A DNA stretch of 64,000 nucleotides, from contig NW_027590151.1 of the NCBI RefSeq assembly GCF_964213995.1, forward strand, positions 992,001-1,056,000, read 5' to 3'. Within the stretch, counting starts at the first letter, position 1. The number at the start of each line of letters is the position of its first letter. The DNA comes from Mustelus asterias. Its lineage: Eukaryota. Positions 6,354-62,059 of the stretch are shown here, in pieces. A model generated the notes under the pieces. The model had not been told where the DNA came from. It did not search any database and saw only the letters and a program-made list of their open reading frames with translations. Both the position numbers and the translations under genes were made by a program.

Positions 6354-6664
6354 ATCTGAGTCATGGAGATTCTGTCACTCAGTCGCTATCCTCAGAAGTA
6401 AAGACGGAAGAAAAAACGTTGAGTTTAAACTGTACCTATGATATTATAATGAGCAACTACGTTTTACCCTGGTCCCGGCAAAACACAAGCACGCAACCTG
6501 TGTTTCTATTGAGGAAAAACTCGATATTTGGTGAAGATATAGCAGATTTTGCGAAAAGCCGTTTCTCTGGAGAGCTTCAGACATCGAGTAAATTCACCGG
6601 TTTGACTATCTCGGGTCTGCAGCTGAATGACGCTGCCGTGTATTACTGCGCTCTCGCTGAGATG
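6354..6664 (+). CDS. T-cell receptor delta/alpha variable gene segment, germline V exon (open frame)
   Basis: Acceptor ttttcag at 6353 (an in-frame alternative at 6344). DLSHGDSVTQSLSSEVKTEEKTLSLNC..LPWSRQ..RFSGELQTSSKFTGLTISGLQLNDAAVYYCALAEM has both cysteines, the tryptophan and the YYCAL end typical of TRDV/TRAV. Confidence 0.92.
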
Positions 6665-6703
6665 CACAGTGATGGAAAGCAGTCTGACTGCTGGACCAAA
6701 ACT
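6665..6703 (+). promoter_or_regulatory. 23-RSS
   Basis: CACAGTG (6665-6671), exactly 23 nt spacer, ACCAAAACT (6695-6703; 7/9 match to ACAAAAACC). Confidence 0.93.
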
Positions 6704-33090: not shown

Positions 33091-33182
33091 GAGGGTTAGC
33101 GTTAATGTTAGTGTTCGGGTTAGTTGGTTAGTTAGGGTTGGGGTTAGTTTTAGTTATAAGGTTAGAGTTAGGGTGAGGGTTA
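33091..33182 (+). repeat. Degenerate (GGGTTA)n telomere-like tract
   Basis: GGGTTAGCGTTAATGTTAGTGTTCGGGTTAG..GTTAGGGTTGGGGTTAG..GTTAGGGTGAGGGTTA. Confidence 0.75.
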
Positions 33183-33185
33183 AAA

Positions 33186-33282
33186 TGTGCAAACTCCGCG
33201 CAGACAGTGGCCCAAGGCCGGAATTGGACCCGAGTCCCTGGCGCTGTGAGGCAACAGTACTAACCACTGTGTCACCTTGCCG
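33186..33282 (-). mobile_element. V-SINE 5' fragment
   Basis: Antisense head CCCTGGCGCTGTGAGGCAACAGTACTAACCACTGTGTCACC. Confidence 0.75.
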
Positions 33283-33340
33283 TTGTTGCAATAATCTGTT
33301 TGTTCTCTGAAATTTAATTAATGCAAAAGATCAAGAAATC

Positions 33341-33376
33341 TAATTATATCCCTAGAGACTGACATCAGGTATAAAT
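33341..33376 (+). promoter_or_regulatory. Conserved proximal promoter of GPCR gene 1 (HD site, O/E-like site, TGACATCA, TATA)
   Basis: TAATTA-TA-TCCCTAGAGA-C-TGACATCA-GG-TATAAAT, 50 nt upstream of the ATG; same cassette and spacing at gene 2. Confidence 0.7.
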
Positions 33377-33426
33377 ATGACAATTTTTCAATGTAGTGCA
33401 GACCGCGATCAGCGCTTCTGGAAGAA

Positions 33427-36400
33427 ATGCACGGAATACCAAAAGGTCTGGTGTTTGCCATTTATTATCCAGTCATAGCAGCTATCGGAGTTTCAGGTAA
33501 AATATCTCATTTATTTAGTAGCTGCCAAAAAATTATTGATTGGCTGCATAAATTCCCCCAATTTATCACCACTTACCTCTACAGAACCAAGTTCCTCCTC
33601 TGATTGAAAGGGACATAAGTTTCCCCGTCGAAGTTCTATTTTCTGCCCTTTAACTTATTCCTCAAAAGTGTCCTGTTTCTACTTCTTCAGACAATTCCTT
33701 ATTTGACATTATAATTTATTCTATTCCCTGACATAATTTTTTGATGTTCAATCCATAAATTTAACGGTATAATTTTCCATCTTACCGTAGTTTCTTCACA
33801 TTAAATACATGATTGCACCGCGTTAACCTTGTACAACCGTGCTGTGACAGGTACCATTTCATCAGTTGGTAATATAAATTGTCCCATTCACCAGTAACAT
33901 CTGACAGTGGAAGTTTTATTGTGTTATTCATTCTGATTGATTTACCGTTCTGCTATAATGGTTAAAACAATTCAATGTTGTTATTTATACAGTTGTTGTG
34001 TGTTATTATGATAGTTGTGTTGGCGTTGACAATATTCCTCTGGGCGAATTCTCAAACTGAGCAGCAGAGGGGCACTGTGGTTCGCATTGCTGCCTCACAG
34101 CACAAGGAACAGGGGCTCAATTCCAGATTTGGGTTGTTGTCTGAGTGGAGTTTGCACATTCTTCGTGTGTGTGTGTGGGTTTCCACACACAGGAAGTGTG
34201 GATGTTCTGACAGAAGTAAGTAAATACTCCATTGGTTGGATGGCCTCTTACTGAACTGTCGGGATTCTAATCCATGGTTTTATGGGATCTCAGTACAAAT
34301 TGAGTCATTGTGTTTTATTTGAACAGTTGATGATGCTGAATTATGAAACTGCTGTCACTGTAATAACGCGAATCTATTGAGCTGCTGAAGTTGAAATTAG
34401 TGAAACAATCCCACAGATTATGTATTAGTTGAAAACACTGAACCATCGAAGAACACCAGAATTATTGTACTAAATTCATCCAAGAGATTTGTTAGGCAGG
34501 GATATGTAAAGAGCTTAGATAATGCGAACAGTTATCATTTGATGAATGTCTGTTATTTATCCGCAACTCACAACAACATGTGCCTGCTTCCATTGCTAAA
34601 CACTCATTGGCTCAGCACTGGATTCCTATTTCATATTTACTGCAGCTTCTGCTGTCTTAGAACCCAGCATCGTTTCAAATTGTTCTGTTTTCTGTAATGA
34701 GTCAAGCAACATAACTGGTCAAATTTCTCGTATTTAGAGTATTGTTTTATATATCACCGGATATTTCAGATGATTATCAGGGATAGAATTCAGTCTTCGC
34801 ACTGCTTCTTAAATCGCCTCCACAAGTTCAGACGAACTGCTCATAATCATCGGTTTATTAAAAAATTTATTCGAGAAAATTCACTGCAAAATTTTCCAAC
34901 AGTAAATAATTTTGCTGTCATTCATGGAGCCACATTTAATACCCATTGAAATATAATCCGTGGCTTTATTAGCTTCCACACTTAATGCTGGTATTTTCCA
35001 ATTTACCTTCTCCAATATTATTTAAATTATTTGTTTTCATGTCGTTGTATTGTGCATTCAATGCTTCAGTGCTGGTTTTGATATGCTTTCCATTATTCCT
35101 CTGTCAGGTCTCATTAAAGATACAGTCACTTTCGTTAACATTCCTTATTATTAACAAAAATATTATTATTAAGCAGAAACAATTGTCCCTGAAATCAGGT
35201 ATAAATTTTGCATCTATCACACAGCATGCAATATCATGAATTGTTTTGTGGCGATGAACTTTCTACAATTGACGAGGGAAGGGCCGTGGATGTCGTCTAT
35301 ATTGATTTTAGTAAAGCGTCTGACAAGGTCCCTCATGGCAGGGTGGTGCAAAAGGTTAAATCGCACGGGATAAAAGGTGAGCTAGCTGGATGGGTGGAGG
35401 ACTGGCTTAGCCATGGAAGACAGGGGGTAACAGTGGAGGGGTCTTTTTCCGGTTGGAGGTCTGTGACTAGTGGTGTTCCGCAGGGCTCTGTACTGGGACC
35501 TCTGCTGTTTGTGATGTATATATATAAATGATTTGGAGGAAGATGTAGCTGGTGTGATCAGTAAGTTTGCGGACGACACAGATTCTGGAGTTGCGGGTAG
35601 TGATGAACATTGTCAGAGAATACAGCAGGATAAAGATAGGCTGGAACATTGGGCGGAGAAATGGCAGATGGAATTTAATCCAGATAAATGCGAAGTGATG
35701 CATTTCGGTAGATCAAATGTTAGTGGGAGCTATACAATAAATGGCAGAACCATCAGGAGTATAGACACACAGAGGGACCTGGGTGCACAAGTCCACAGAT
35801 CCTTAAAGGTGGCAGCACAGCTGGAGAGGTTGGTCAAGAAGGCATATGGCATGCTTGCCTTTATTGGATGGGGCATAGAATATAAAAGTTGGCATATGAT
35901 GTTGCAGCTGTATAGAAAATTGCTTAGGCCACATTGGGAATATTGTGTCCAGTTCTAGTCGCCACACTACCAGAAGGACGTGGAGGCTTTGGTGAGAGTA
36001 CAGAAAAGGTTTAACAGGATGTTACCTGGTGTGGAGGGTCTTAGATATGAGGAGAGATTGGGTAAACTGGGGTTGTTCTCCCTGGAAAGACGGATGATGA
36101 GGGGCGACCTAATAGACGTGTATAAAATTATGAAGGGCATAGATAGGATGAACAGTGGGAAGCTTTTTCCCAGGTCTGAGGTGACGAACACAAGGGGTCA
36201 CGGGTTCAATGTGAGGGGGGCAAGGTTCAACACAGATGTCAGGGGAACGTATTTTACACAGAGAGTGGTGCGCGCCTGGAATGCACTGCCAAGCAAGGTG
36301 ATTGAGGCGACCACGCTGGGATCGTTGAAGACTTATCTAGATAGCCACATGAACAGACTGGGAATAGAGGGATACAAACGAATGGTCCAGTTGGGCACAT

Positions 36401-37430
36401 GAGTGGCGCAGGCGTGGAGGGCCGAAGGGCCTGTTCCTGTGCTGTATTGTTCTTTGTTCTTTGTTCTCACGCTATCTCATGCACAAATTCTCACAATCTC
36501 TTTCCCTCTATTGCAGCTAACACAGCAGTGATTATGATCCTCGCTAGAAGAAGTTGTGGTCTCTCCAGATGTATCACGTATTACCTGGTGTCGATGGGGG
36601 TGGCGGATCTCCTCCTCATAATATCTGCTGTAATATTGAACAGGATTGCTGGAATGTTTTTTCCATCCAGCTTCTTGTCTGTCACACCAGTTTGCAGTTT
36701 CCGTACAGCCCTAAATTGTGTCGCCATGGACAGCTCTGTCTGGTTAACCGTCGCTTTCACGTTTGATAGATTTGTGGCTATTTGCTGCCAGAAGCTCAAA
36801 GTTAAATATTGCAATGAAAATGTGGCGACGTGGGTCATTGGAATCGTGTCCACACTGAGCTGTGTAAAAAATGTCTTTGTGTACTTTATTTATGAGCCCA
36901 TGTACATAATTAGCAATGTACCCTGGCTCTGCAACGTAAAGTTAATATTTTACACATCCCCTTTCTGGGCTGCTTATGACTTGATGCGTTGTATTGTAAC
37001 CCCTATCCTTCCTTTCATTTTGATTTTGCTGCTGAATGCTCTTACGGTAAGACACATTCTAGTGGCCAATAGAGCCCGCAGGAGACTCCGGGCCCAGAAC
37101 AATGGAAAGAATCAGAGTGACCCAGAGGTGGACAAGCGGAAAAAGTCCATTGTTTTACTCTTCACCATTTCAGGAAATTTCATCCTGTTGTACTTGTTAT
37201 TTTTTATAACTATCATCTATGTCCGAATTGTCAAAGTTACTTATTTCTCAGGTTCTAGTTTCAGTGCTACATTTAATCTTGAGGAAAATGGATATATGCT
37301 TCTGTTTTTGTGTTCCTGCATTAACCCATTGACTTATGCTGGGACCCAGAGTAAAATCAGAGCCGAGTTAAAGAATTTGGTGACTTATCCACTAAAACAA
37401 TTTGTTAATTTTTTTAAACTTTGCACATAG
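33427..37430 (+). CDS. GPR139/GPR142-like class A GPCR, gene 1; exons 33427-33496 and 36517-37430, 327 aa
   Basis: Exon 1 MHGIPKGLVFAIYYPVIAAIGVS with GTAAAA donor (phase 1); acceptor ttgcag at 36516. Seven TM segments with SMGVADLL, FTFDRFVAICC, CINPLTY; frame open to TAG. Confidence 0.9.
34068..34275 (+). mobile_element. Degraded V-SINE in the gene 1 intron
   Basis: GGGGCACTGTGGTTCGCATTGCTGCCTCACAGCAC..GGAGTTTGCACATTCT. Confidence 0.65.
35266..36467 (+). mobile_element. CR1 3' fragment in the gene 1 intron
   Basis: RT motifs and (TTCTTTG)n tail ending ~50 nt before the exon 2 acceptor. Confidence 0.93.
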
Positions 37431-37562
37431 GTGAACTAATGATAATGCAATTTATTTTCAGTCTGTGAAATGCTCCTTACCGTCCGTTCATTCCTCCGTC
37501 CATCCTTCTCTCTCTCCCCATCCATCCATCCGGCCGTCCGTTGGTCGTCCATCTCCCCATCC

Positions 37563-37979
37563 NNNNNNNNNNNNNNNNNNNNNNNNNNNNNNNNNNNNNN
37601 NNNNNNNNNNNNNNNNNNNNNNNNNNNNNNNNNNNNNNNNNNNNNNNNNNNNNNNNNNNNNNNNNNNNNNNNNNNNNNNNNNNNNNNNNNNNNNNNNNNN
37701 NNNNNNNNNNNNNNNNNNNNNNNNNNNNNNNNNNNNNNNNNNNNNNNNNNNNNNNNNNNNNNNNNNNNNNNNNNNNNNNNNNNNNNNNNNNNNNNNNNNN
37801 NNNNNNNNNNNNNNNNNNNNNNNNNNNNNNNNNNNNNNNNNNNNNNNNNNNNNNNNNNNNNNNNNNNNNNNNNNNNNNNNNNNNNNNNNNNNNNNNNNNN
37901 NNNNNNNNNNNNNNNNNNNNNNNNNNNNNNNNNNNNNNNNNNNNNNNNNNNNNNNNNNNNNNNNNNNNNNNNNNNNNNN
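37563..37979. other. Assembly gap (417 N) flanked by (CCAT)n/(CT)n low-complexity repeats
   Basis: Run of N seen directly. Confidence 0.99.
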
Positions 37980-38559
37980 TCTATTCATCTCTCTCTCTCC
38001 AACCATTTATCTATTCATCTCTCTCTCTCCAACCATTTAGCTATTCATCTCTCTCTCTCTCTCTTCTCTCCACCTCTCTCTCGGCCTCTCTATGTGTCTA
38101 CCTATCTATCTATTTGTCTGTCACATTTCACCATTATCGAGTGAGGGTGTACAACCTTTTAAGAGGAGAGCTAGCCTTTGAAAGCAATGCAGTGTTTTGG
38201 GTAGTGGTGTGGCGTTCTTCTGGGTGTGGAACATTTGGGGTTAATTAAGACTTCCTGTTCTGTGCCTGCGAGGGAAGTATCACTTTGGCCAGAATGTACT
38301 GCAGTGATGGATGTTTTACACACCTTAATCCAATTTGGGAGTAGGTTCTGGTAGATTTGTGCTCTGATGATCCACTGGAGGGTTCAGCCGGGAGTAGGTT
38401 ATTCAAGTGCCCTTTATCCCGGTAGGAATTCATCAAGTTCTCATCTTTATCAGGAACCATGGTGTTCAGACAGACGAGAGGATAGCTGCCATTCGTTTGT
38501 CCCTAGTTTGATGTGAAAAAAATAGCTTTTTGACATTGGTGATTAGTCCTTCATGGGCA

Positions 38560-41550
38560 CCATATGGCCAAGTATGCTCTGCATACAATAAAGAGGACAA
38601 ATCCAATCCGGTCAATTATGGGACCATTTGACTACCCTCAAACATAATTGCAGTGAAGGAAGGTCGCTTCAACAGCGCTATCAAAGTGTAATTGTTCAGC
38701 AATAACCAGCTCAGTGACTGCCAATTTGGATTCAGACAGGTTCACTGAGCTCATTATAGTCTTGGTTCAAAGATGAAATTCAGAGTTGAGGTGGAAGTGT
38801 CTTCATAACCAGGCAGCATTTGACCGAGTGTGGAATCAAGAAGCGCTCTCAATATTGGTGTCAATGGGAATCAGGGGAAAACTCTCCGCTCGTTTGGGCC
38901 ACACTTAGCACCAAGTAAGATGATTGTTGTGTTTGAAGGTCAATCTTCCCAATTCAAGGAGATCACAGTATCAGTGTACTGTTACGAGAGAAGGAGAGTA
39001 TTGGGTCCATCGTGTTTGTACCGGCTCCCCAAATCAGTTCATAACTTATTGCCATTCTCCTGCCTTTTCCCCGCACCACTGACACAGTTTCATATAATCA
39101 TGCAATGGCATCTTGAATGCTTCGATTCAAACTACCTCCACCACACTTTCAGTCCCTGCATTCCAGACCAAAAACATTAATGTGTGTGAAAAATAACTCA
39201 CCTCTGATTTCCTTATTTTGCAAATCATTTTTGTCTGTGCCCTCGCGTTCTTGATAGTTTTACGCATGGGACCAGTATCTCCTGATCTACTCTTCCCAGG
39301 CCCCTCATGATTTTGTAAATCTCCGTCAACTACAAAAGTACTATTTTTTTTTTAAATTCTACAAGTCCTTGGGACGTTCTTTTTTATCTATCAGTATCAT
39401 TTCATGACCCATTTTCACTCTTCATTTAAGTTTTGTCTTGCACGTTCTCTTCTCCTTCGGGTCTTCTTTTGTTTTGTACCCTCAATGTCTACCACAAGCT
39501 TCCGCTTTACTCATAATTCAGTGTGGTATATTCCCCCATATGCAGGGTTCACTCGATTAAAATTTCCCATCGCTTTACTCTTTTGGAACATGTTAGTCCG
39601 ACAATCTCCCTGTTTCCAGTTTGAACGCTGTTCCGCCGCAGATTTACATAAAAGTGTCTGCTCCGTGTCTGTACTGGCCAACCCGTGTCTGACCTGAGTA
39701 AAATCACTTTGATTTCCGGCCAATACGTGTCCTTTCCCAAACCAATCTTGAATATGTCTGCGTTATGATCGCTGTCTGCCAAATATTTCCCCACCAATAT
39801 TTCAATCAAATGCCTGGGGTCCTTACCTACAACTAATTACAGGATCTTCTGTCTAAATGCTTCCTCGGGAAGCATTTTAAGGAGAGTTGTGCTCCCTCTA
39901 AAACTTTAACACCATAACTCTTCCCGTTAACGTTAGGGAAGCTGAAATCCCCCACTATTCCGATCATATTTCTTTCACACTTCTGGGACATTTGCCTACA
40001 AATCTGCGCTTGCGCTTTTCTCAGACTGACAGAATCATAGAATCCCTACAGTGCAGAAGGAAGTCATCAGTACATCAATTCTGCACCGACTCTTGGAAGG
40101 GATCTGCTACCTGCAGCGAATCCCCATAACATCGCATATTTATCATGGGTCATCCAACTGAACTACACATCTTTGGACACTGAGGGACAAGATAGCATGA
40201 TCAATCTGCACAACCTTGGACTCTGTGAGGAAACTGGAACATTGGGAGTAAGCACAGGAGGACATGATATCATCACGCAGTCACCTAAGGCCGGAATTTA
40301 ACCTGATTTCCTGGCTCTATGAGGCAGCAATGCTAATTACTGGGCCATCGTATCATCGTATCATCCTCTAAGATGGCTTCTTGAGCCTTGTAATATGTCA
40401 AATCTCCGTACAGCTGCAATCAATTCCCTCATCCCCCTCCACGTTCACCTTCTTCCCTGTCCTACCTGACCATCATACATCCTGAAATGTTGATCTTCCT
40501 ATCCTGTCCCTCTCTCAATCATGTCGCGGTGACATCAGTGACCTCACACCCCCATGATTCAATATGTGCCTCAATTCATCTACTCTGTTCGTGTTCGTCA
40601 GATTCCTTGAAATAAAATAAATACAATCCAATCTTGCCAAACTGCCTTCTGCCATAACGGGCCTAGAACCTCGATACCTTCTTGACGCACTCGCTACTTC
40701 CTCTAATTTAGTGGTTGCATTCCCCCCTGCTGAACAATCTCTTGCGATTCCACTCCCCTACCAAGTTAATTCAAACTCTCCCCAACAGCAGGAGCCAGTG
40801 CACGAGCAAACCTCCCTGCAAAGACATCGGTCCCATTTCGTTACAGCTCCTTCAGCCTTGTTCAGGTTGCACCGTCCCCAGAAGAGGTCTCAAAGTCCCA
40901 GAGATCTAAAATCCTCCCTTCTGCACCAACTCTATAGCCATGTGTTGGACAAAACTTTTTATTTCTAAACTCACTAGCATGTGGCACCGGAATTAATCCA
41001 GGAATTGCTACCGTAGATCCAAAAATTGTGCTTGCTGGACCTCACCACTTTTTCTACTGTTATCGCTGCTACCTTTATGTGCCATGATATCTGATTATTT
41101 GGCCTCCAGCTTCAGAATACCCTGCAGCCCTCAAGTGACAACGCTACCTCTGGCATCTGGGAGGAAACATACCATCCGGAAGCCTCTGATGTCACGGCAA
41201 TGCAGCTTGTCTTCCATCCTTACAATTGAATTCACTACAGCTATAGAGCTGTCCTACTTCTTCCTCTCGCATGTTGTGGACAAGACGCATCCTTGGTGCC
41301 ATGACATTGGCTGCCACCGATTGCCCCTACGCAGCCATTTCCCCAAACGGATCCAAAACGTTATATCTGTTAGAAAGGGGGCTAGCTTTAGGGGACTTCG
41401 GCGCTACTTGCTTTCCTTTAGTCTGCCTATTGGGCACGCATGTCTTTCATGTGTGTTCAATCTTCACCTGCGCTGTGCACACTTCATGAACGTGTTATCC
41501 ATGACTTGTTCATCATAAAGGATACTCCGCAGTGAATCCACCCTCAGCTC
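38560..41550. mobile_element. Nest of old LINE fragments (RT fragment + at ~38560-38970; CR1 pieces - at ~38975-41550) and a V-SINE (- at ~40030-40352)
   Basis: Decayed DKSNPVNY / QFGFRQ RT-like sequence and antisense CR1 3'/APE-like sequence. Confidence 0.6.
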
Positions 41551-42949
41551 CATATGCGAAATTTGGTTAGCCATTTAGATGCGCTTCGTGCCAAAACAAT
41601 TGTGGAAAGTTTGTTTTGTAGTCAAGACAAATAATTCTGAAAGCAATTGGTGCAAAATCATGCATTGGATTGCCTGTTAAAAGTGGAGTGGAAGCTTTGT
41701 TCAAAACTGTCATTTGGATAACCTTGTCTGGATATCGAAAAGCAAAGAGCTCAGGGAAGACATTATGATGAGAAAATATTTTGAAGCGGGTTTTTTGGGC
41801 AGAAGCTTGAAAGTTCTCATGTGACATTCAATTGTGGGTATTCAGAGGAGAAAAACTCAAGCTTTAACTTGCTCCCAGAGCGGAGAGTGTGTGTTTGACA
41901 ATAGTAGATCTCTGTAATTCGAAGGGACTTTGTGGTAGTGAGAAAATTGTAGCTTCAGATGAACAGTGCAAACCGTCTGACTCATGAAATCTGTGTGCAT
42001 TCATAAACTAAGGGGGGAATACATTAATATTCTCCATCAATCCAACTTCTCACGATTAATATAGTTTCCTTGTTAGAAATAATTCTTTGTACTGTAATAA
42101 TGGTCCTCCACGTTTTATGGACAAAAAGGGTAAAACTTACGATATTTTGATCAATGGTTCCTTTCTGGGATCTGGCCATCCAGTTTTGCTATCAACTCGG
42201 ATCATAACAAATCAAACAAAACAAACATTTTACATTTCTTTCAGTTGCAAAAAATTGCACGTGACATAAACTTGTTGCCACCAAAACTGCTCAGAAATCT
42301 TCACCTCGTTCCCTTCTCTGCGATGAGAATCTTTTTCTGGATTCACATGCCTTTTCATCTACCGTTTAAAGTTCCCCAACTCACCCCGACAGCTTTCTTT
42401 TCAAAAACTGCCTCAGTTTCATTATTTTAGGACCCTGCCTCAGTGCCTAATGATCATAGCTGATTGAACTGAGGGTGGCGTGGAAAAAGCTCTGTGAAAT
42501 ATTGCAAACTTGATGAAGATTCAGACATTAAGTACAGACCACAATTTGCTTCGACCACCAAATTGCTTCAATATCCTGCCCAGGACACCGAACACACGTA
42601 GAATAGTATCGTAAAGAGAAAATATTTCTTTTAATCCCCCAGGGCATGCATTCTCTGTGAGAAAAGATGTGCTTGAGACAACAGTCCCAAATCGGCTGTA
42701 ACCCATTGTTTTAATGCTTACTTATGTCGAATGATAACTCATCAACCCCTGCCCACTCCCTCCAAGCCTTCCCTCTGTGAGGAAGTGACATTGCACCATC
42801 TTGGCATTAGCCAAGGGCATCTAACCAAACAAGCTACGATCGTTATCGTCGGCTTCATCTCAGCTACATTAAGATATATATCAATGAGTATATTATTTGA
42901 AGAATAAATCACTTTTTGGTAGTATTGTGCAAATGCTACCAAATGCCAA

Positions 42950-43264
42950 TCACTGTGGCAGAGTGGATAGCACTGCTGCCTCACAGCACCAGGCACTATA
43001 TTCGATTACGGGCTGGGTCACTGTCTGCGTGGAGTTTCCACATTCTACTCGTGGCTGCGTAGGATTCCTTCAAAGCTCCGGTTTCCTCCCACAGTCCAAA
43101 GATGTTCTGATTACGTTGATTGGCCATGCTAAATTGACACTTAGTGTCAGGGGCATTGGCAGGGTAAATAGGAGGGATTACAGGGTTAGGGCTTGAGTGG
43201 GATTATTGTTGGTGCATGTTTGATGGACCGAATGGCTTTGTCCTTCGCTGTGTGATTCTATGTT
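42950..43264 (+). mobile_element. HE1-like V-SINE
   Basis: GTGGATAGCACTGCTGCCTCACAGCACCAGG..GCTCCGGTTTCCTCCCACAGTCCAAAGATG..GATTCTATG. Confidence 0.85.
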
Positions 43265-43749
43265 CAAACGGCGCAAAATATTTTCACAGTGTCCGAGAAT
43301 CATAGAGAGTACACTAGCCCAATTCGTTCATCCGAGTTTGGACGTGCTTGTGGCGTTTCCTCGTCGCAAGAGGTGAGGAGAATCGGGTTGGGGGGAAGCT
43401 AATTATTCTTATCAGCACAAAGCTCTTTAGTCAGACCGCAGTAGGGAGAGCGAGAATTCGGCTGAGTGCAAATCATCATTCAGTTGAGGAATTAGAGACC
43501 AATAAGAGGGTGTAAAGCATACTTTGTGCTGTGGAAAACCAGTCAGGGAGAGTATGCTGACCACTCTCTTGCGACAATAGGTGTTGAGTGTGGTTTGTCT
43601 CAACTTGAAGTAAATATACAATAGCTCAGATTGTTCTCCACACAACCAATAACGTAATACACTATGAAGACAAAGAAAAGATGAGGGGGCTCTTCATAAG
43701 CATGGAAAAGCATGATAGATAAACTATCACTTCTTAAACCGTTCAATTA

Positions 43750-44350
43750 GCAAGGGGCACCTTGTGTTTGAAAGGACGGCAGAAAGCTATTTTTGTACAG
43801 CGGATCAATCATGGCACAATGGTATTGAAGGATTGGTAACTCTCCTCTGTTAAATGAACAAGCACAATCCGATGAGGGGTGTATTTCCAACAACACACAA
43901 CAAGTTTGACATCAACAGGAAAAGTAATCCATCTATATACATCAGCATTCAGTTCCTCCACCTTGTATTCACAGTGGCAGCAGGGTGCAGCATCTGCAAT
44001 TTCCATTGCAGCAACATAAAAGTCACCATGGACAGCACCATTCAATTTTGTGCCTTCTATATTTTTGAAGGACAAGAGTAACAGATGCATGGGACCTTCA
44101 TCGCCTGCAGGTTACTGTCGACATCACAGAGCATCCTATATCAGAACAATATTGCTCTTAATCTATTGTTGCTGCGTGAACATCCTGTAATTTATTATGC
44201 TTTATATCCTCTTATTGGTCTCTAATTCCTCAACTGTGTGTGAAACTATAAAACATGGTCTGCAAACATTCAAGGAAATGGCTCACTGCCACAATCAAAA
44301 ATGGCAATTCGGCATAGACAATAAATTCTGTCCTGCTCAGCGAAACCCAC
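43750..44350 (+). mobile_element. Old LINE 3' remnant (similar remnant on - at ~63370-63960)
   Basis: Resembles decayed shark CR1-group ORF2 C-terminus and 3' UTR. Confidence 0.45.
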
Positions 44351-47308
44351 ATCACGTAAAATAATGTAAATTTCGGCACATACCTTGTTCAAAAATGATT
44401 ATCTTGCACTACGTGGAGCCCTCGATGTCTCTTTAAACATAGCAAGTTGTGTCTGGGGAGAATCATCAATTTCGAAATTTAAAAGTGCACGGAGTCGTTT
44501 CCCCATCAGAAATCCATGTTGGACCCCCTTCCCAAATTATTAGGTTTGCACATGGTATTGACTTTCTGCTTTGCAGCAGACCAGATATCCGTTCTCCTGG
44601 ATGCCCCCTGTAATCCATGTTCTGAAAGCTTTTGTCGGTGTATTATGTGACACTTGTTAGAAGGCATTTTGCAAATGTTGATAAAATGCACCTATATTAC
44701 CATTTACTTTAACGCATGTAAAGGCTACAAAATATCAATGAACTCGCTCAAAAAGCACTTTCCATTTCGATACTCGCGTTGTTTATTAAAAACAACATAT
44801 CTGTGTTTTCTATCTTGCCACATTTTCTCATTGATGAATGATTTCGCTAGTTTCTCCCCAGAGAATGATAAACTGATCCATCGACACTGACTATCTTGCA
44901 TGTGCTGTGTTTTTACATAGAGACATAACGTGTGCAAACAATATCTTCTCCGCACTACACTTGTTCATGCCGAATTATTAAATATATGCAGCACTGCCTC
45001 TTCTATCGCTTTGCTCGATGAGTATAAAATACACAGATGAAACTCGCCTGGATCAGATCTCTGATCACTTCAAGTTTCATTTCTATACTTATTGCATCTG
45101 TGCTTTAAGTTATTTTACTTGATATTTTCCTTCCACCTTTTCATGTCATGTCAACCTGGTTTGTTCCAATGACAAATACTCACACCACATACATGTTTCG
45201 TATTCCTGCAGTTCTGCTGTTGCTTCTTGTGTTTTTATCTGACCAAAGTCTTACAGAAAATCCCCATCAGTAACTTCGGTGTTACAATATACTTCTTGTT
45301 CATTTCAATACTCTATTTCTTCGTAATCCTCTTCATCCTGACTTGAATACTTGTCCTCGCTTCTCATTATCACCTCGGTTGTGCATAAATGTGTTAAGTT
45401 GAGTTCATTAGGAGCACTTTGTGCATTTAAGTCATGTATGCATGTGCAGCAGACGATCATTTACAGTCAGTCATATAACTGACTGGTGCCATTAATGACC
45501 TTGTGCTTTGAACAGCAACTATATCGTTCAAGAACGAATGCACGACATGCCGTTAGATAGCTGGAAGTCTGCAGTTAATTTAAATAATCGATTGCCAGGG
45601 CAACAATGACAATGAACTAAATGAATCACGTAACATCCGGAGACAATGGAAATGAATTAAATGCATTCAATACCAAAAGTCATGCAGTATGGTGCAGAAA
45701 TGGAGAGCTGCATATCTACGTATGCTGACACCACTCTTAGACGAATAAAGGTGATTTAATTAACATCATAAATACATGCCTATGGAAGGAGGAATTATTA
45801 TTTGCTTGCCACATGTTTCAAAAATATCTAGTCTTATAGAGAATAAAATGAATGCTCTATTAATGATCAGCAACTAGGTTCTTTCTGGGGGAAGATTGAG
45901 AAATTACAATTGTAAGTAAAACAAGAAAACCTATCGAGTGATAGATCGCAAAATTGAAAGCATAAAAACGAACGTGACAAAAAAACTAGTAAATCAGACA
46001 GACCAGGGATAGAATCTATTAAATGTAGTGAAGCGCACATCGTGACACATGAAGTCAATAAATTTGAAAGAATTCGTAGGAAGCACAGAAAAGATATTTT
46101 CCATGAAAATCAGGCATCAATTGTTTCTGATTGACAATATATCGTAACAATAAATATGGACATCTGACGTTGGGATGCAATCGAAGATCAACATTGAGAC
46201 GATAAAAATACATAATCATGCCACATTATGAGTTACTTCGCAATGGAACTGAAATTGACGTTTTCATTCTTTATATTACAGAACATTGCACCTGCTAATG
46301 GAAGACAGAAGAAAATACAGCACATAGTTAAGCGGATAGATTGACTGGCATCTGAAGGATTATAATACAAATCGCATATGTTCTCCTGGCAGAAGGGAAG
46401 GTGGTATAGTGTCCATTTTATAAAATCTAATTGGACTAGCTGAGGTAAAAATCTGCAAGTTTTTCCTAATAGGGGAGCTGGAGGACCACAAAGTGGGAAA
46501 TTCAGAAGTCATCTGGTGAAATCAATATTTAATTGAGCTCTCTATCCATTAGGGGTAAGACCTGGCGACAGAGAGGATCTCTTTAAAATTGATGCTGATC
46601 ATTCAAATTAAATATTATCTTTAAACCACAGACTTTTGGGAAACTGTGTGTGCGATTGGACACATGAAATGTGATACATGCAGCTTAGCTTGGGATGGGG
46701 GGGGGGGCGGGGGTGTTGGCATTTGACTTTGGCCCAATGGTTCCAACATTCTCCATCACTGGAGTGTCCCTTGCCTAATTTATCAGCCTGTTTCTGAATG
46801 CTTGGTTATCGGACAGGAGTCTAATGATACTCCGAAGATGCAATAAGACGAAGTGCCGGAGTGTACAGTCAATGGTGTATATAGTATTATCCTGGTATAA
46901 TTTTCATTTTTGGTAAAGTTCTGTTAATTGTTCTGCACCTTCACACAGAGAACTGTTCCGAAATTCAACATGATTATGCACACGTTTTCACAGAGTGAGT
47001 GTTTCAGGTCTGGAATGCACCTAATGTTCAAACTGTTACTAAGAAGGATCTAAGTGGAATTAATAAATATTTAAATGTGTCATCCACTGTCAGGACAGAG
47101 GTCAGGCTCTAAGCCCCTCACATGAATGAAAAATGTTCAGGCAAAACGAGACTGATAGGAAAGCACCAGACCAAAGTGATCACGAACAATTGAACTTGAA
47201 AATAACTGAGAATGGACAACGATATGGAATGGGCACGGCATTGTTAGACATTCATAAATTCACAGAGTTGGTCAGGATTACAGAGTGAATGAACATGTAC
47301 ATGGGAAG

Positions 47309-47654
47309 TGCGGGGAGAGAATAGAGCCAACATTGCGAGTCCAGATGACCCTTCATCAGAGCTGAGAACAAAGAGTATCAGCAGGCAGTAAAGAGAACAA
47401 ATGTTATGATGGTCTTCATTGCGAGAGGATTTCACAATAGGAATTGGGGTGTTTTACTGGAATCTTACATGGCGATGGTGAGGCAATAGCTGGAATATTA
47501 TGTGCAATTTTGGTGTCCTTATCAGACGAAGGATTTCCTTGTTAGAGAAGAGGAGTTTCACCAGGCTGATTCCTGGGATGGCAGGTTTGCCGCATGACGA
47601 GAGATTAAATCAGTTAGGATTGACTTCATTGAACTCATTGAAGTTAAGACGAGA
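47309..47654 (+). repeat. Direct duplicate of 48733-49069 (Penelope/CR1 composite)
   Basis: Clearly alignable by eye over ~340 nt, including the junction between the two element types. Confidence 0.9.
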
Positions 47655-47709
47655 CACAAATCAGATCAGGTGGACTGGAATGTTAAAATCATGTTTGATT
47701 TTAGTCTTT

Positions 47710-50700
47710 TCATCTCTTACATAATTTAACAATCAATAACAGTGGATATTTCACCCCATTCTTTAACTCCTCCCTGAATTTGCTCTGGGGCGCTGCGTAA
47801 ATGAAAGGGTTGATGCAGCAACTCAAAAGCTGAAGCATATATCCGTATTCCTCCAGAACAAATGTAGACTGGCTGACATTAGAACCTGAGAAATAAGTCA
47901 CTTTCGCTATTCGGACGTAAAGGACGGTTATAAAGAATATTAAATATAAGATGATGAAACTGCCTGAAATGGCAAAGAGTAAAACAATAGATTTTCGCCT
48001 TTTTTCCAGCTCTGGATCACTCTGATTCTCTCCATTTGTCCCGGTCCGCAGTCTCTTACGAGCTCTACTGGCCGCGATAATGTGTCTGACAGTCAGAACA
48101 TTGAGCAGTAAAATTAGAATGAATGGGAGACAAGGGGTTAAAATACACTGAATCCATTCAAATGCAGCCCATTCAGGTGCGGTATAATATGTTGATTTTA
48201 TGCCGCAGAACCAGGGTACATTGTTAATTACGTCCAAAGGTTCATATATAAAATATAAGAAAGAATTTTTGAAACAACTCAATATGGACACGATTGTTAT
48301 GACCCGTGCAGCTGTCTTCACAGTGCAATATTTGATTTTCAGCTTCTGGCAACAAATGGCTACAAATCGATCAAAGGTGAAAGCCACCGTTAACCAGGCG
48401 GAACTATCTATTCCAGCGTAATTTAGGGCACAACGAAAACTGCACACTGGCGTGATGGACAGTAAACTGAATGGGAAATAGATTCCAGCAATCCTGTTCA
48501 ATATCACCATGCTGACAAGGAGCAGTAGATCAGTCGCCGCCATAGAAACAAGATAGCAAGTGATGCATCTGGAGAGACCACATCTTCCTCTTGACAAGAT
48601 CACAATCACTACTAAGTTAGCTGTAACAAAGAAAGTCATAGAGATTGAGAAAGACTAAACAGAAATGCTGAAAGCAAAAAGCAAAATAGTGCGGCTGCTG
48701 GAATCTGTAACGAAAACAGGACTGACAGCATCTGCGGGGAGAGAATAGAGCCAGCGTTTCGAGTCCAGATGACCCTTCATCAGAGCTAAGAACAAAGAGT
48801 ATCAGAAGGCAGTAAAGAGAACAAATGGTATGATGGCCTTCATTGCGAGTGGATTTCACTATAGGGATTGGGGTGCTTTCCTGAAATTTTACATGGCGAT
48901 GGTGAGGCAACAGCTGGAATATTATGTGCAGTTTCGGTGCCTTTATCAGACGAAGGATATCCTTGTTTTAGAAGAGGAGTTTCACCAGGCTGATTTCTAT
49001 GATGGTAGGTTTGCCACAAGACGAGAGATTAAATCAGTTCGGATTGACTTCATTGAAATTGAGACGAGAGGAAGGGGATCTCATGGAGATTTACAAATTT
49101 CAAACAGAATTAGACAGTGTAGCTTCAGATAGAATGTTCTCCATGGTGAGGGAGTCCAGAACTAGGGGTCATAGTGTGAGGTTAAGGACTGAGGTGAGGA
49201 GAAATGTCTTCACCAGGAGAATGGTGAATGTGTTGAATTCACGAAAACAGTAAGCACTTGAGGCCAACACATCGTGTGAGTTCAGGAAGAAATTATGTAC
49301 AGCTCTTGGGGTTAAAGGGACCTGGGGATAGGGCAAAAAGGTGGGTTCACGATGTCGATTCTGATGATCAGCCATAATCAAAATGAATGGTGGAGCAGGC
49401 TCGCCGGGCAAATTGGTCTACTCCTGCTTCTACTTTCTATGTTACATTTCTATGTTGTAGAAACAACTTGATTATGCAGTCATCTGATATTGTGTAATGT
49501 GGCAGGACTGGTTCGTAGCATCATAGTAAATGCTTCTCCAACGGTCGCCATGTGATTGAACTACTCAGAAAATAAATCAACCTAAATGAAGCCGATAACA
49601 TTGTTATCAGGGAAAAAACTGGATAACTTGTGTTGGCTAATTAGATTAAAGCATAGTGCCAGAAATAACAGATGGAAACAATCAAGAAACAATCAAAAAA
49701 ATCAACAAGAATGAATGCCATTGAAAAACAAAAGCTCAGCGAGAAATATTCACCCGAATCTTGTTATTTAACTAAAGGAATACATTATGTCAAAAGAAGA
49801 GGCTTCAAATGTTGTAAAAAAATGTAGAAAGTCTGAGGATTGGTAGCGTTTAATAAATCAGCAATGTAACAATGTAAAATTTGTCTTTCTTGTAAGGAAT
49901 GCGCAGCAGATGGATTAAAGACATCTTTCGACAGTTGCGCAGAATTTGGCGTGACCATAACTGCATCTTTCTATTATGTCCCCAATTTAAGGAGGGAAAT
50001 ACTTAACTTTGTGGCAGAACAGTTAAGGATCACTATGCCTCTGCCTTTTATGAGAGTATTGTCTATGATGAGTAGCTGACTATATTTTGTTGATATTTTC
50101 CGGAGTTTAGATGAATAAGGTTTGATCACATTGAAACATCCAGTGTTCTGAAGGACATTGACAGGAAGTAAACTGACAGGCGTTTACAATGGCTGGAGAA
50201 TCTAAAGTATGGGGGCACAGATTACCATTAACAGGACGATCATTTACCTCTGCAGTGACAATAAATGTTTTCATTAAGGAGCAGTAAAGCATTGCAATGT
50301 TCTAATGGAGACTACAATGCCAGCAACGTCACTTCAATAAATAAATTCATGATATTCTTTTGGCATGATTTAATGGTTCAATAATCAGTACACAATCAAC
50401 TATTTGTGGAAAATGCTGTCACCATAACTGTCTAACGCATTTTCATATTGTGAGAACAGTGTGACAGTTAACTCACATGACAAGGGTAAGCTTCCAATAA
50501 TTCACACAGGGCAGCATTAACAACACAGTAAGTTAAAATTACCCCGGTTTCACAGGGCGACTATTTGTCAACAGAATGTTTTCAAATCACAATGGATGTA
50601 TTTTCACACCGAAATCATAGTTTGGTTATTCCCCTGGAGCTTGGATGTGAGTAACATATTGACATTTCATGTAAACTGGAATGATAATGTGACGATTACA

Positions 50701-51205
50701 TGACAGTAACATTGACACTAACATAATATAACTGCATGAACCTTGATGACAATGTACTATTCTAGCAAAGGTAATTGTTCCAATAGAGTGAATAAATAAG
50801 TAGGCTGGCTGTATACACTGCCTGTCATCCTTATGGTAATTCACTCACAATACCGCTAAGACACTGGAAAAAAAAGTCACACTGTGATAACACGGTTACA
50901 GTTCAAACATGCTTGCAGTGTATCTAACACAATATAACTACAATTACACCATGCAAACAGTCTGATAACTCACACAAAATAGCAGTTCAATGACAGAACA
51001 GAACCAGACATCCACCTTGAAAAAACGGCAGAGGAAGGTATGAAAATATAATGAAAGGGATACATCGTATAGAAGAGCAGTGACCCAGGCTAATCAATAC
51101 ATTCCCCAGAATAACGCCAGGCTAAAATACTTAACCTGGAACCCCGATAGCGGCAAGGAACGGATAGTAAATGGCAAACAGCAGTCCTTGTGGTATTCCG
51201 TGCAT
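47710..51205 (-). CDS. GPR139/GPR142-like class A GPCR, gene 2; exons 51205-51136 and 48620-47710, 326 aa
   Basis: Exon 1 MHGIPQGLLFAIYYPFLAAIGVP with GTTAAG donor; acceptor ttacag at 48621. SMAATDLL, FTFDRFVAICC, CINPFIY; open to TGA. Confidence 0.9.
48670..49456 (+). mobile_element. Penelope-derived half element (~48670-48787) joined to a CR1 3' fragment, in the gene 2 intron
   Basis: Hammerhead-like core on the minus strand; VRQQLEYYVQF peptide; TTCTATG tail. Confidence 0.8.
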
Positions 51206-51255
51206 TTCTAACAGAACCTCGCAAAGCTTTGTTTATTCCAGTCACTCGTTGTCAG

Positions 51256-51291
51256 ATTTATATGTGATGTCAGTCTCCAGGGGCATCATTA
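51256..51291 (-). promoter_or_regulatory. Conserved proximal promoter of GPCR gene 2
   Basis: Reverse complement TAATGA-TG-CCCCTGGAGA-C-TGACATCA-CA-TATAAAT, 50 nt upstream of the ATG. Confidence 0.7.
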
Positions 51292-51559
51292 ATTGGTTTG
51301 GATTTTTAAAACTTTATTGGACTAAATTTAATCAGGGGTTTAGTGCAGCTGCCGTCAGGCTTGTATTTGATGCTCAGATGGAAGGGAAGATCGATTCCAT
51401 GGAAGTAGCGGACTTGTTTCTATTTGAAAGTTTCAAAGTCCATTGTAGAATCGCGTTGACATCTCTAAAAATGTAATGAAAATTAAAGTAGACGATTGAG
51501 TCATGAAAATGAGAATGAAGCCTGCCGGATCCTCGTGTCTGAAACCTTAGTATTTGAGG

Positions 51560-60453: not shown

Positions 60454-61326
60454 TTATACTGAGGCATATTTAATTGTGTCCTTCAATTCTCCCCTGAATT
60501 TAGCCTGAATTCCTGCATACATTCACGTATTGGTGCTGGAACTCAAGAGTTGCAGCATCTACTCACTTTCCTGAAGGAGAAATTTTGGGCAGTTAGCATT
60601 AGAACTTATGGAATAGTTATTGCCTGCGATTTGGACAAATAGGAAATTTACAACATAAATCAACCACAGGAGGAGCCATATTTCTGAGATGGCAAAAAGT
60701 AATATGATAGACATTCTGCGCCTCTCCATCTCTGGGTCACTCTGATTCTGCCCATTATTTTGGGTTCGGAGTCTCCTTCGGGCTCTACTGGCCGATGTAA
60801 TGTGTCTGACAGTCACTGCATTGAGCAGAAAAATGAAGATAACAGGGAGACATGGGGTGAGAATACGGTCCAGCAAGTCAAACACTCTCCAAGAAAAAGC
60901 AATATAACTGACTTTCGTGATGCTGCAGTACCATGGTGCGTTTTTTAGGAAAATACATACGTTCAAATATGAAGTAAAAGGGGATGTTTTTTCGACAGCA
61001 TAAGGCGCACACCATTCCGATAACCACAGTGCTGTTTTTTCAGTGAAGTATTTCGCCTTCAGCTGCTGATAACATATGGCAACGAAGCGATCGAATGTAA
61101 AAGCGACTGTTCACCAGACAGACCAATCTCTGGACAATAACCACACTAAGCCCGGTGTCGTGGACAGGAAACTGGCTGAGAAGTGAATAGCACGAATTCG
61201 ATTTAATAGCGCAGCAGTGACAATCACAAGGAGATCCGTGACCGCCATGGATACCAGGCCCTAAGTGATGCATCTGGACAGACCACAACGTCCGCGAGAC
61301 AGGATCACAATTGTCACCAAGTTATC
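60454..61326 (-). pseudogene. GPR139-like GPCR pseudogene (exon 2), gene 3
   Basis: NLVTIVILSRGRCGLSRCIT*, AFTFDRFVAIC, LTPCLP..LLNAVTVRHI, QSDPEMERRR. Several stops, deletions, no AG acceptor; exon 1 not confidently found in the window. Confidence 0.9.
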
Positions 61327-62059
61327 AGAATGAAAGTGAAAGCGAGAACGAAATTGAATTACTGATTTGCCTGATAGGTGCATGAATTTGATGGCAGTAT
61401 AATATAGATTCGTATTAATCAATGATACAACGGATCGATTTGCCAAAGCATTACAGCCTGCCCTTTAAAAGCAGTGTAACATTGTAATTTAATGAATAAA
61501 ATTAAATGCAATTTTGATTTTTAGACTCATACAATCATTACATATAATCGGAGTTGAAGAAACCAAATTGCATTATTGTAATAAAATCAACAAAATTGGG
61601 GACGTTAACACTGAATTAGCAAATAAAACACACTACACAAGTATTGCTTCCAGAAGGCAAATAATGAGAATAAGAGCTCGAAATCAATTGAATAATAGTA
61701 AAATCCAGCGAATGTAAGGCAGTGAGTAATGTCAGATAATAAACATCACAATGAAAAATGTTGAAGTAACAAAATCACCTTCAGTAATAATTTTGATGCA
61801 GTTCGCTTATCCTGCAGGAACTTCAGCAGTTTTTGGGTAGTGATTTCATTCATGAGCAATGTCATGGCAAGCGAGGTCGTGCTACCTTAGTGAGGGGGAT
61901 CATAGATTCATCTGAATGCAATTCTAATATTCCTTAATTTATATTCCAATATTCCTTTCGTTATAAACCAATACTGGTTAAAAGGAATATTGTTCATGGC
62001 AAACAGATTGAGATGCTTGTTGTCCTTCAAACAGTGACACGGGTTCTGTAAATCATGAA

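What the first reader, a model, noticed from the sequence alone, without database searches (positions are those of the whole stretch)
33341..51291. GPR139-like receptors carry an olfactory-receptor-type promoter cassette: candidate chemosensory family
Seen: both intact paralogs share a 36-nt cassette with identical spacing, ending 50 nt before the ATG, while flanks diverge. Gene 1 has TAATTA-nn-TCCCTAGAGA-C-TGACATCA-nn-TATAAAT (33341-33376) and gene 2 has TAATGA-nn-CCCCTGGAGA-C-TGACATCA-nn-TATAAAT (51291-51256). Known: adjacent homeodomain (Lhx2) and O/E (Olf1/EBF; TCCCnnGGGA, OR-type YYYCARRRR) sites are the hallmark of vertebrate odorant-receptor promoters and enhancers; mammalian GPR139 responds to L-Trp and L-Phe; sharks have few canonical ORs. 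Inference: these clustered, birth-and-death GPCRs may be expressed in olfactory neurons as amino-acid-type chemoreceptors outside the OR/TAAR/V1R/V2R families.
Basis: partly seen in the sequence, partly recalled or inferred. Interest (0 to 1): 0.85.

Follow-up and report, generated by a model that had tools for sequence, protein, structure and literature searches.

The report
Shared promoter block of shark GPCR paralogs
Two neighbouring shark receptor genes have kept the same short stretch of control DNA just ahead of their start sites while everything around it mutated away, so it is a working promoter, but whether it switches these genes on in the nose could not be tested here.

Summary
Both intact two-exon receptor genes carry the 36-nt cassette at the stated places, each ending 50 nt before the ATG. 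It is 30 of 36 identical, while the 100 nt upstream are 27 of 100 identical, introns are unalignable and 38 of 80 four-fold sites differ. It is therefore a selectively kept TATA-proximal promoter.

The olfactory reading is untested.
- No RNA run holds the gene, and the laid runs look like DNA.
- The O/E-like site is imperfect, matching 7 and 6 of 8 specified consensus letters.
- Tightly juxtaposed HD+O/E sites mark mouse OR enhancers, not promoters.
- "GPR139-like" is loose: a family profile scores GPR139 and the TRH receptor about equally, so the amino-acid ligand inference has no basis.

The family is large (2028 database proteins; the 120 listed are all sharks) and varies mainly on its outer face. 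Unchecked notes of this scan make the same promoter claim on other DNA of this genome. Two others read NF-kB instead.

The parts
33341..33383 (+). Gene 1 conserved promoter block (36-nt cassette plus A-TGACAA)
   Evidence: cassette 30 of 36 identical to gene 2 and the next 7 nt 6 of 7; the local alignment starts at 33341.
33341..33346 (+). TAATTA, homeodomain-type core
   Evidence: Reading by consensus only; binding not tested.
33349..33358 (+). TCCCTAGAGA, O/E (EBF)-like site, 7 of 8 specified letters of TCCCNNGGGA
   Evidence: The degenerate pattern is not enriched in the window (7 found, 6.5 expected).
33360..33367 (+). TGACATCA, CRE/TRE-type bZIP site, invariant between the paralogs
   Evidence: Identical to the Jun-TRE core (PMC2441799) and to the ATF2-bound PDII site of E-selectin (PMC4973847).
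33370..33376 (+). TATAAAT, TATA box; the start site is inferred about 25-30 nt downstream (not mapped)
   Evidence: invariant between the paralogs.
33427..33496 (+). Gene 1 exon 1 (MHGIPKGLVFAIYYPVIAAIGVS plus the first base of a split codon), GT donor at 33497
   Evidence: (profile of family N-termini, E 2.1e-16).
33497..36516 (+). Gene 1 intron (3020 nt), unalignable with the gene 2 intron
36517..37430 (+). Gene 1 exon 2 with stop; the model is 327 aa
   Evidence: (7tm_1, E 2.6e-18).
51249..51291 (-). Gene 2 conserved promoter block: TAATGA 51291-51286, CCCCTGGAGA 51283-51274, TGACATCA 51272-51265, TATAAAT 51262-51256, TGACAA 51254-51249
51136..51205 (-). Gene 2 exon 1
   Evidence: (E 2.1e-16).
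48621..51135 (-). Gene 2 intron (2515 nt)
47710..48620 (-). Gene 2 exon 2 with stop; the model is 326 aa
   Evidence: (7tm_1, E 5.5e-22).
60466..61335 (-). Third copy: exon-2 pseudogene with 4 premature in-frame stops and NPxxY lost; no exon 1 or cassette in the window
33200..33270 (.). Dispersed repeat about 70 nt upstream of the gene 1 cassette; it bounds the homologous promoter
   Evidence: 3 copies in the window at 3 or fewer mismatches of 23, 0 expected. No tRNA or Rfam call.
37563..37979 (.). Assembly gap, 132 nt after gene 1's stop, outside both genes' coding sequence, introns and promoters

Best explanation
The cassette is the core and proximal promoter of a subfamily of shark class-A GPCR genes, held by purifying selection since the two paralogs split.

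Inferred working: TBP binds TATAAAT and transcription starts about 25-30 nt downstream, which would leave a 5'UTR of roughly 20-30 nt. Three activator sites are packed within 29 nt directly upstream. They are a bZIP CRE/TRE-type site (TGACATCA) 2 nt from the TATA box, a 10-mer resembling an imperfect O/E (EBF) site 1 nt further up, and a TAAT homeodomain core 2 nt beyond that.

Shown here: the conservation, the fixed spacing, and the letter identity to published sites. Inferred: which proteins bind and in which cells. The sequence alone does not fix the tissue.

The genes belong to a very large, shark-wide, two-exon receptor family with an almost absent N-terminus and variability concentrated on its outer face. 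The family is only loosely GPR139-like.
For: - Cassette 30 of 36 identical, against 27 of 100 upstream, 14 of 33 in the mid 5'UTR and 35 of 100 in the intron, all in the same register.
- Neutral yardstick: 38 of 80 four-fold sites differ (JC 0.75). The chance of 30 or more of 36 identical at that level is 1.1e-4.
- Only two blocks align between the loci, and the first begins exactly at the TAAT.
- The mosaic of conserved cassette, diverged UTR middle and conserved Kozak plus exon 1 argues against a single gene-conversion tract.
- The promoter is AT-rich with no CpG island: GC is 0.34 and 0.36 in the -120 region against 0.43 for the window.
- TGACATCA is the Jun-TRE core and the E-selectin ATF2 site.
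- Exon 1 is conserved family-wide: 86 of 120 listed homologs start MH..., and 7 more carry the motif internally.
- Family size and range: 2028 proteins at E<=1e-10 among 3171 candidates, and the 120 listed come from 11 shark species by my reading of the list.
- Outer-facing positions are more variable: 0.99 against 0.65 bits, with 19 of the 30 most variable positions facing out. The topology was rough, and 76 of 120 sequences were used.
Against: Only two promoters could be compared, so the element boundaries rest on six differences. No start site, RNA or splice evidence was obtained. No poly(A) signal was found within 1000 nt after gene 2's stop or before the gap after gene 1, so the transcripts remain models. 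Two unchecked notes on other paralogs of this genome read an NF-kB site next to the TATA box, so this cassette may be specific to a subfamily.
Confidence: 0.8

Rival explanations
1. [quoted passage not shown] The genes would be expressed sparsely in olfactory sensory neurons as a new chemoreceptor family.
For: HD core and O/E-like site are 2 nt apart in both paralogs, and all 6 differences fall on positions this reading calls degenerate (6 of 6). OR promoters are AT-rich with O/E, HD and TBP motifs (review PMC12547500, passages). The family is large, clustered, has a pseudogene and is variable on its outer face. Sharks have few working ORs, and V2R is called their main olfactory family (PMC11979771, passages).
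Against: The O/E match is 7 and 6 of 8 letters, with a shared GAGA half-site. O/E patterns are not enriched in the window: 1 perfect against 0.85 expected, and 7 degenerate against 6.5 expected. Juxtaposed HD+O/E sites are a feature of OR enhancers and are not enriched in OR promoters. The 50 most specific 'brain & olfactory epithelium' genes of the catshark held no GPCR; this is weak evidence, since chemoreceptors are rare in bulk RNA. No RNA evidence was obtained here. The degenerate-position count is circular.
Confidence: 0.25
2. Immune-cell promoter. The bZIP CRE-type site, with or without EBF, drives expression in lymphocytes or other leukocytes. This would fit the family's position among TCR and Ig segments.
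For: TGACATCA is the one invariant 8-mer besides the TATA box. A CRE-containing conserved decamer sits in many TRBV promoters (PMC2685407, one passage). One TCR-type V segment with an RSS lies in this window at about 6641. Unchecked notes describe the family as interleaved with TCR V segments elsewhere in the genome.
Against: No CRE-like 8-mer lies near the one V segment found. TGACATCA is not clearly enriched in the window: 8 found, 4.3 expected, and 3 of 100 shuffles reached 8. Genomic neighbourhood does not imply co-expression. No RNA evidence was obtained.
Confidence: 0.15
3. Not selection: the 5' block is alike because of a recent gene conversion or because the duplication is young.
For: The conserved block is contiguous with the conserved exon 1.
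Against: Within the block, the 33-nt UTR middle is 14 of 33 identical, near random, while the segments on either side are 83-84% identical. Four-fold sites in exon 2 are 47.5% different, and the introns do not align.
Confidence: 0.04

Closest known systems
Mouse odorant-receptor promoters (HD and O/E motifs, TATA, AT-rich)
   Same: AT-rich, TATA-type, with a TAAT core and an O/E-like site close upstream of the presumed start (review passages).
   Different: Here the sites are packed 2 nt apart directly on the TATA box, and the O/E site is imperfect. In most mouse OR promoters the two motifs are not juxtaposed. An invariant bZIP site sits between the O/E-like site and the TATA box. Binding and expression are unknown.
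Greek-Island composite Lhx2/Ebf motif of OR enhancers (Monahan 2017, PMC5608512)
   Same: HD and O/E-like sites side by side with fixed spacing in both copies.
   Different: The composite is an intergenic enhancer feature, depleted in promoters. Its letters appear only in figures that the tool does not hold, so no letter-level comparison was made.
Jun-TRE / ATF2-type CRE sites (c-jun promoter, E-selectin PDII)
   Same: Exact 8-mer TGACATCA.
   Different: Those are stress- or cytokine-responsive promoters of unrelated genes. Nothing shows that Jun/ATF proteins bind here.
Human GPR139 (solved structures 7vug and 9m42)
   Same: Best solved match, class-A fold, similar length. The intron falls just before the conserved P-A-N of TM1. 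That human GPR139 has its intron at the same place is recalled, not checked.
   Different: Only 34 bits for a single protein and 54.2 bits for the family profile, tied with the TRH receptor at 53.5 bits. Sources name family members GPR139, GPR15-like, capa-, sex-peptide-, FMRFamide- or TRH-receptor-like. No basis for shared ligands.

Membership tests
Odorant-receptor-type promoter | Homeodomain (TAAT-core) site near the start site | tested here: met
   TAATTA at 33341-33346 and TAATGA at 51291-51286. This is a sequence match only.
   7 of 8 and 6 of 8 specified letters, with a shared GAGA half-site. No enrichment in the window.
Odorant-receptor-type promoter | AT-rich, TATA-containing, no CpG island | tested here: met
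   GC is 0.34 and 0.36 in the -120 region against 0.43 for the window; TATAAAT is present. The features themselves are from review passages.
Odorant-receptor-type promoter | Motifs enriched across the gene family's promoters | not testable with these tools
Odorant-receptor-type promoter | Lhx2/Ebf occupancy and sparse expression in olfactory sensory neurons | not testable with these tools
   No RNA run is on record, and the laid runs are DNA-like.
Greek-Island composite motif | HD and O/E sites juxtaposed at a fixed distance | tested here: inconclusive
   The sites are 2 nt apart in both copies. The published logo could not be read.
Greek-Island composite motif | Located in intergenic enhancers, not promoters | tested here: not met
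   The block sits on the TATA box, 50 nt before the ATG. The composite is not enriched in OR promoters.
GPR139 subfamily | Closer in sequence to GPR139 than to other class-A receptors | tested here: inconclusive
   The profile scores GPR139 at 54.2 bits, the TRH receptor at 53.5 and the PrRP receptor at 47.5. The single protein scores 34.2 against 33.5.
GPR139 subfamily | Activation by L-Trp and L-Phe | not testable with these tools
Rhodopsin-type (class A) GPCR, Pfam 7tm_1 | Match above the curated cut-off; DRY-type and NPxxY motifs | tested here: met
   E 5.5e-22 and 2.6e-18, cut-off 30.5 bits. FDRF and NPFIY appear in the family consensus.
Vertebrate chemoreceptor-type multigene family | Large lineage-specific expansion, clusters with pseudogenes, variable ligand-facing positions | tested here: met
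   2028 proteins at E<=1e-10. Three copies lie in 28 kb, one of them dead. Outer positions show 0.99 bits against 0.65 for inner ones (rough topology).
Vertebrate chemoreceptor-type multigene family | Expression in chemosensory cells | not testable with these tools
CRE/TRE bZIP site | 8-mer identical to a site with shown Jun/ATF2 binding | tested here: met
   TGACATCA matches the Jun-TRE core and E-selectin PDII. Binding at this locus was not tested.

The most novel reading that the evidence does not exclude
Sharks, whose canonical OR, TAAR and V1R genes have largely left the nose, may use this large, unstudied class-A family as odorant receptors. The family's compact HD + O/E-like + bZIP + TATA promoter would then show that Lhx2/Ebf-type receptor control is older than, or recruited independently of, the OR family itself.
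Probability: 0.2. Interest if true: 0.85.

Novelty: new variant of a known kind. Interest (0 to 1): 0.5.

Why it matters
Shark olfaction is a standing puzzle. Canonical OR, TAAR and V1R repertoires are tiny and mostly not expressed in the nose, and V2Rs are considered the main receptors (PMC11979771, passages).

A shark-wide receptor family with thousands of database members turned up in none of six full-text searches under its annotation name or by shark olfaction terms. It is an obvious candidate for some diversified recognition task.

The conserved promoter block gives a concrete handle: a 43-nt element to mutate, to use as bait, and to search upstream of every paralog.

Even if the olfactory idea fails, the block is a clean example of promoter elements surviving about 0.75 substitutions per neutral site. 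The tissue question can be settled quickly with shark multi-tissue RNA-seq that already exists. One example is the 20-tissue set, including olfactory epithelium, thymus and spleen, named in PMC12227049.

Tried and rejected
- **Other promoters of the family.** A protein scan and a cassette pattern scan of metagenome contigs both found nothing.
- **Expression.** The look-up of sequencing runs listed no run on record as RNA. Read laying on gene 2 showed contigs on the intron in X2, X3 and X5. The single exon1-to-exon2 joint, one X3 contig from 48626 to 51134, is not at the GT/AG borders (the true intron is 48621-51135) and has only 30 letters on its short side. I drew nothing from it.
- **Third copy's promoter.** No exon 1 was found in the window; the next best profile hit has E = 1.
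- **TCR V-promoter link.** One V segment with an RSS was found by a strict pattern, with no CRE-like 8-mer near it. This is kept only as a weak rival.
- **NF-kB reading.** Two other notes propose it. By eye I saw no GGGRNNYYCC-type site on either strand of this cassette. No call tested this.
- **MEIS/TALE, MARE and ARE readings of the TGACA parts.** Rejected by eye against recalled consensus sequences; no call was made.
- **Bacterial-type promoter scan.** Irrelevant to a eukaryotic gene; ignored.
- **tRNA and Rfam scans of the repeat upstream of gene 1.** Both blank. Its repeat nature rests.
- **Papers not held.** Michaloski 2006, Clowney 2011 and Anderson 1988. Their content is cited only through the review and the TRB paper.
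- **Composite-motif letters.** Not found in the text of PMC5608512 or PMC11643329.
- **Closed supplements.** Datasets S7 and S8 of PMC11979771 list tissue-specific catshark genes and may hold family members.
- **Uninformative searches.** and one search were too broad.

Full report
**What is in the sequence**

The two claimed cassettes are at the stated coordinates.
- Gene 1, + strand: TAATTA-TA-TCCCTAGAGA-C-TGACATCA-GG-TATAAAT at 33341-33376, ATG at 33427.
- Gene 2, - strand: TAATGA-TG-CCCCTGGAGA-C-TGACATCA-CA-TATAAAT at 51291-51256, ATG at 51205.

Fifty nucleotides separate cassette and ATG in both genes. The 19-nt core pattern has exactly these two matches in the window even with three mismatches allowed. 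The expected number is 0.04, and 0 of 100 shuffles gave two or more. The HD-plus-O/E part alone is less exceptional, since 2 of 100 shuffles reached two matches when two mismatches were allowed.

**Gene models**

Each gene has a 70-nt first coding exon (33427-33496 and 51205-51136) that encodes MHGIP(K/Q)GL... and ends in a GT donor. The introns are 3020 and 2515 nt. The second exons (36517-37430 and 48620-47710) follow a pyrimidine tract and an AG. The models are 327 and 326 aa. Exon 2 was searched alone, and exon 1 only through a profile built from database N-termini.

A third copy at 60466-61335 (-) has four premature in-frame stops and a destroyed NPxxY motif. Its exon 1 is not in the window: a profile of family N-termini finds only the two known exons at E 2.1e-16, and the next hit has E = 1.

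**The assembly gap**

The N run 37563-37979 starts 132 nt after gene 1's stop codon and is flanked by CCATCC/TCTC low-complexity sequence. It lies in no coding sequence, intron or promoter of either gene. It may cut gene 1's 3'UTR, because no AATAAA or ATTAAA lies between the stop and the gap. Continuity across it is unknown, and I did not try to fill it.

**Is the conservation more than chance or recency?**

A sensitive blastn of the gene 1 locus (31400-37560) against the gene 2 locus (53230-47300) returned 15 rows. Only two have E below 0.3. One is 33341-33505 against 51291-51127 (165 nt, 75%, E 6e-33), which begins exactly at the TAAT. The other is exon 2.

Identities in the ungapped register:

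| Segment | Identical |
|---|---|
| Upstream 100 nt | 27 of 100 |
| Cassette | 30 of 36 |
| Next 7 nt (N-TGACAA) | 6 of 7 |
| Middle of the 5'UTR | 14 of 33 |
| Last 10 nt before the ATG | 8 of 10 |
| Exon 1 | 58 of 69 |
| First 100 nt of intron | 35 of 100 |

The best 36-mer match in 40 shuffles of the gene 2 upstream region was 25, against 30 observed. As a neutral yardstick, 38 of 80 four-fold degenerate sites in exon 2 differ (JC distance 0.75), and the proteins are 205 of 300 identical. At that neutral level, 30 or more identities in 36 has probability 1.1e-4.

The mosaic pattern of conserved, diverged and conserved segments argues against a gene-conversion tract. Sequence about 70-140 nt upstream of the gene 1 cassette belongs to a dispersed repeat: three copies in the window at 3 or fewer mismatches of 23, with none expected. 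So the ancestral promoter cannot extend much further in gene 1. I conclude that the block 33341-33383 / 51291-51249 is a selectively maintained TATA-proximal promoter.

**Reading the elements**

All six differences between the cassettes lie at positions that the reading HD-N2-O/E-N-bZIP-N2-TATA calls degenerate. That is 6 of 6, with hypergeometric probability 4e-5. The count is circular, because the boundaries were drawn from these same two sequences.
- The TAAT cores are ordinary homeodomain sites. TAATGA ends the extended HD sequence quoted for the H and P elements (PMC7804114, passage).
- The 10-mer matches the O/E palindrome at 7 and 6 of its 8 specified letters. Both copies share GAGA where the consensus has GGGA.
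- O/E patterns are not enriched in the window: 1 perfect against 0.85 expected, and 7 degenerate against 6.5 expected.
It is also the ATF2-dependent PDII site of the E-selectin promoter in PMC4973847. It is thus a CRE/TRE-type bZIP site. Window-wide it occurs 8 times against 4.3 expected.
- The -120 regions are AT-rich (GC 0.34 and 0.36 against 0.43) with no CpG island.

**Comparison with odorant-receptor control DNA**

From passages of a 2025 review (PMC12547500): OR promoters are AT-rich, often carry an O/E motif within a few hundred bp of the start site, and also carry HD, MEF2A and TBP motifs. [quoted passage not shown]

The shark block therefore shares its ingredients with OR promoters and its adjacency with OR enhancers. 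It sits on a TATA box and includes a bZIP site. It resembles both and is a typical example of neither. The composite's letters appear only in figures, so I could not compare them.

**What the genes are**

Exon 2 matches Pfam 7tm_1 (E 5.5e-22 and 2.6e-18). Against solved structures, GPR139 is the top hit but only just:
- Single protein: 34.2 bits for GPR139 against 33.5 for the TRH receptor.
- Profile of 34 family members: 54.2 bits for GPR139, 53.5 for the TRH receptor and 47.5 for the PrRP receptor.

The database search found 2028 proteins at E<=1e-10 among 3171 candidates. The best 120 are all from sharks, 11 species by my reading of the list, with Heterodontus francisci most frequent. The best identity is 80% and none is identical. 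Source names range over GPR139, GPR15-like, capa-, sex-peptide-, FMRFamide- and TRH-receptor-like. That search sees only proteins of 0.55-1.75 times the query length. "GPR139-like" is therefore an annotation label, not a demonstrated subfamily, and the inference to amino-acid ligands has no support.

The N-terminus is nearly absent and highly conserved: 86 of 120 start MH..., and 7 more carry the motif internally. I aligned the 76 of 120 sequences that start MH and are 320-330 aa long, dropping 44. In that alignment, variability is higher at outward-facing positions than at inward-facing ones (0.99 against 0.65 bits, Mann-Whitney P 5e-5), and 19 of the 30 most variable positions face outward. 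The topology was assigned roughly by me. This fits a receptor repertoire diversifying in ligand recognition. It does not say which cells use it.

**Expression**

This could not be tested. The run search on gene 2's exon 2 listed six runs, none on record as RNA. I laid four of them on 47300-51500.
- X3 and X5 cover all 30 bins, intron included.
- X2 has contigs on intron sequence (50828-51080).
- No contig shows a joint at the GT/AG borders.

All four look like DNA of this species or a related one. The catshark study reports that the 50 most specific "brain & olfactory epithelium" genes held no GPCR (PMC11979771, passages). That is only weak evidence, because chemoreceptors are rare in bulk RNA.

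**Other promoters**

Earlier unchecked notes of this scan are divided. Two make the same HD+O/E claim on other DNA of this genome, and two read an NF-kB site next to the TATA box in other paralogs. Other notes place family members among TCR V segments. In this window I found one V segment with an RSS near 6641, with no CRE-like site beside it.

**In print**

Six full-text searches found no paper on this shark family or its expression: GPR139 with shark; GPR139 with olfactory epithelium and expansion; "coupled receptor 139" with elasmobranch and with shark; GPR139 with chemosensory; and catshark olfactory RNA-seq. The library lacks most subscription journals, and supplements were closed.

**Verdict**

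The block is a real, old, constrained promoter. Its assignment to Lhx2/Ebf and to olfactory neurons is one of several compatible readings. I put it at about one in four, an immune-cell reading at about one in seven, and leave the remainder open. The step that would decide it is mapping existing multi-tissue shark RNA-seq to the family and surveying all paralog promoters.

Noticed in passing
window 6419-6673 (+): A TCR-type V segment (…LQLNDAAVYYCA) with a heptamer 24 nt after the YYC codons. It was the only one found by a strict pattern. A tblastn with it found no second copy in the window (best other E 1.5).
   Followed up: partly
window 1892-3820, 19690-20688 (+), 27149-28324 (-): Long ORFs with reverse-transcriptase-like text (…YMDFSKAFDKVPH…FADDTK…), that is LINE fragments, on both sides of the receptor genes. 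Seen in the ORF list; not searched.
   Followed up: no
window 33200-33270, 31286-31308, 42972-42994: A dispersed repeat (core …GGCGCTGTGAGGCA…) present three times in the window. ARAGORN and Rfam call nothing there. One copy sits about 70 nt upstream of the gene 1 cassette.
   Followed up: partly
window 33536-33547 and 51097-51086: A 12-nt stretch (11 of 12 identical) about 40 nt into intron 1 is shared in register by both genes, while the rest of the intron start is near random. It could be a small intronic element or chance.
   Followed up: no
window 46700-47709 (-) and 37431-37562 (+): No AATAAA or ATTAAA within 1000 nt after gene 2's stop, or between gene 1's stop and the gap. The 3' ends of the transcripts are unknown.
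   Followed up: no
window 47441-47581, 48710-48850, 49133-49414: In the laid DNA-like runs these bins have depths hundreds to thousands of times those of neighbouring bins. They are high-copy repeats in gene 2's 3' flank and intron.
   Followed up: no
window 51164-51353: Run X3 holds a 191-nt contig about 90% identical (18 other letters, 1 gap) across exon 1's start, the 5'UTR, the cassette and 62 nt upstream. A 99% contig lies beside it. This hints at a recent second copy of this promoter in that organism.
   Followed up: no
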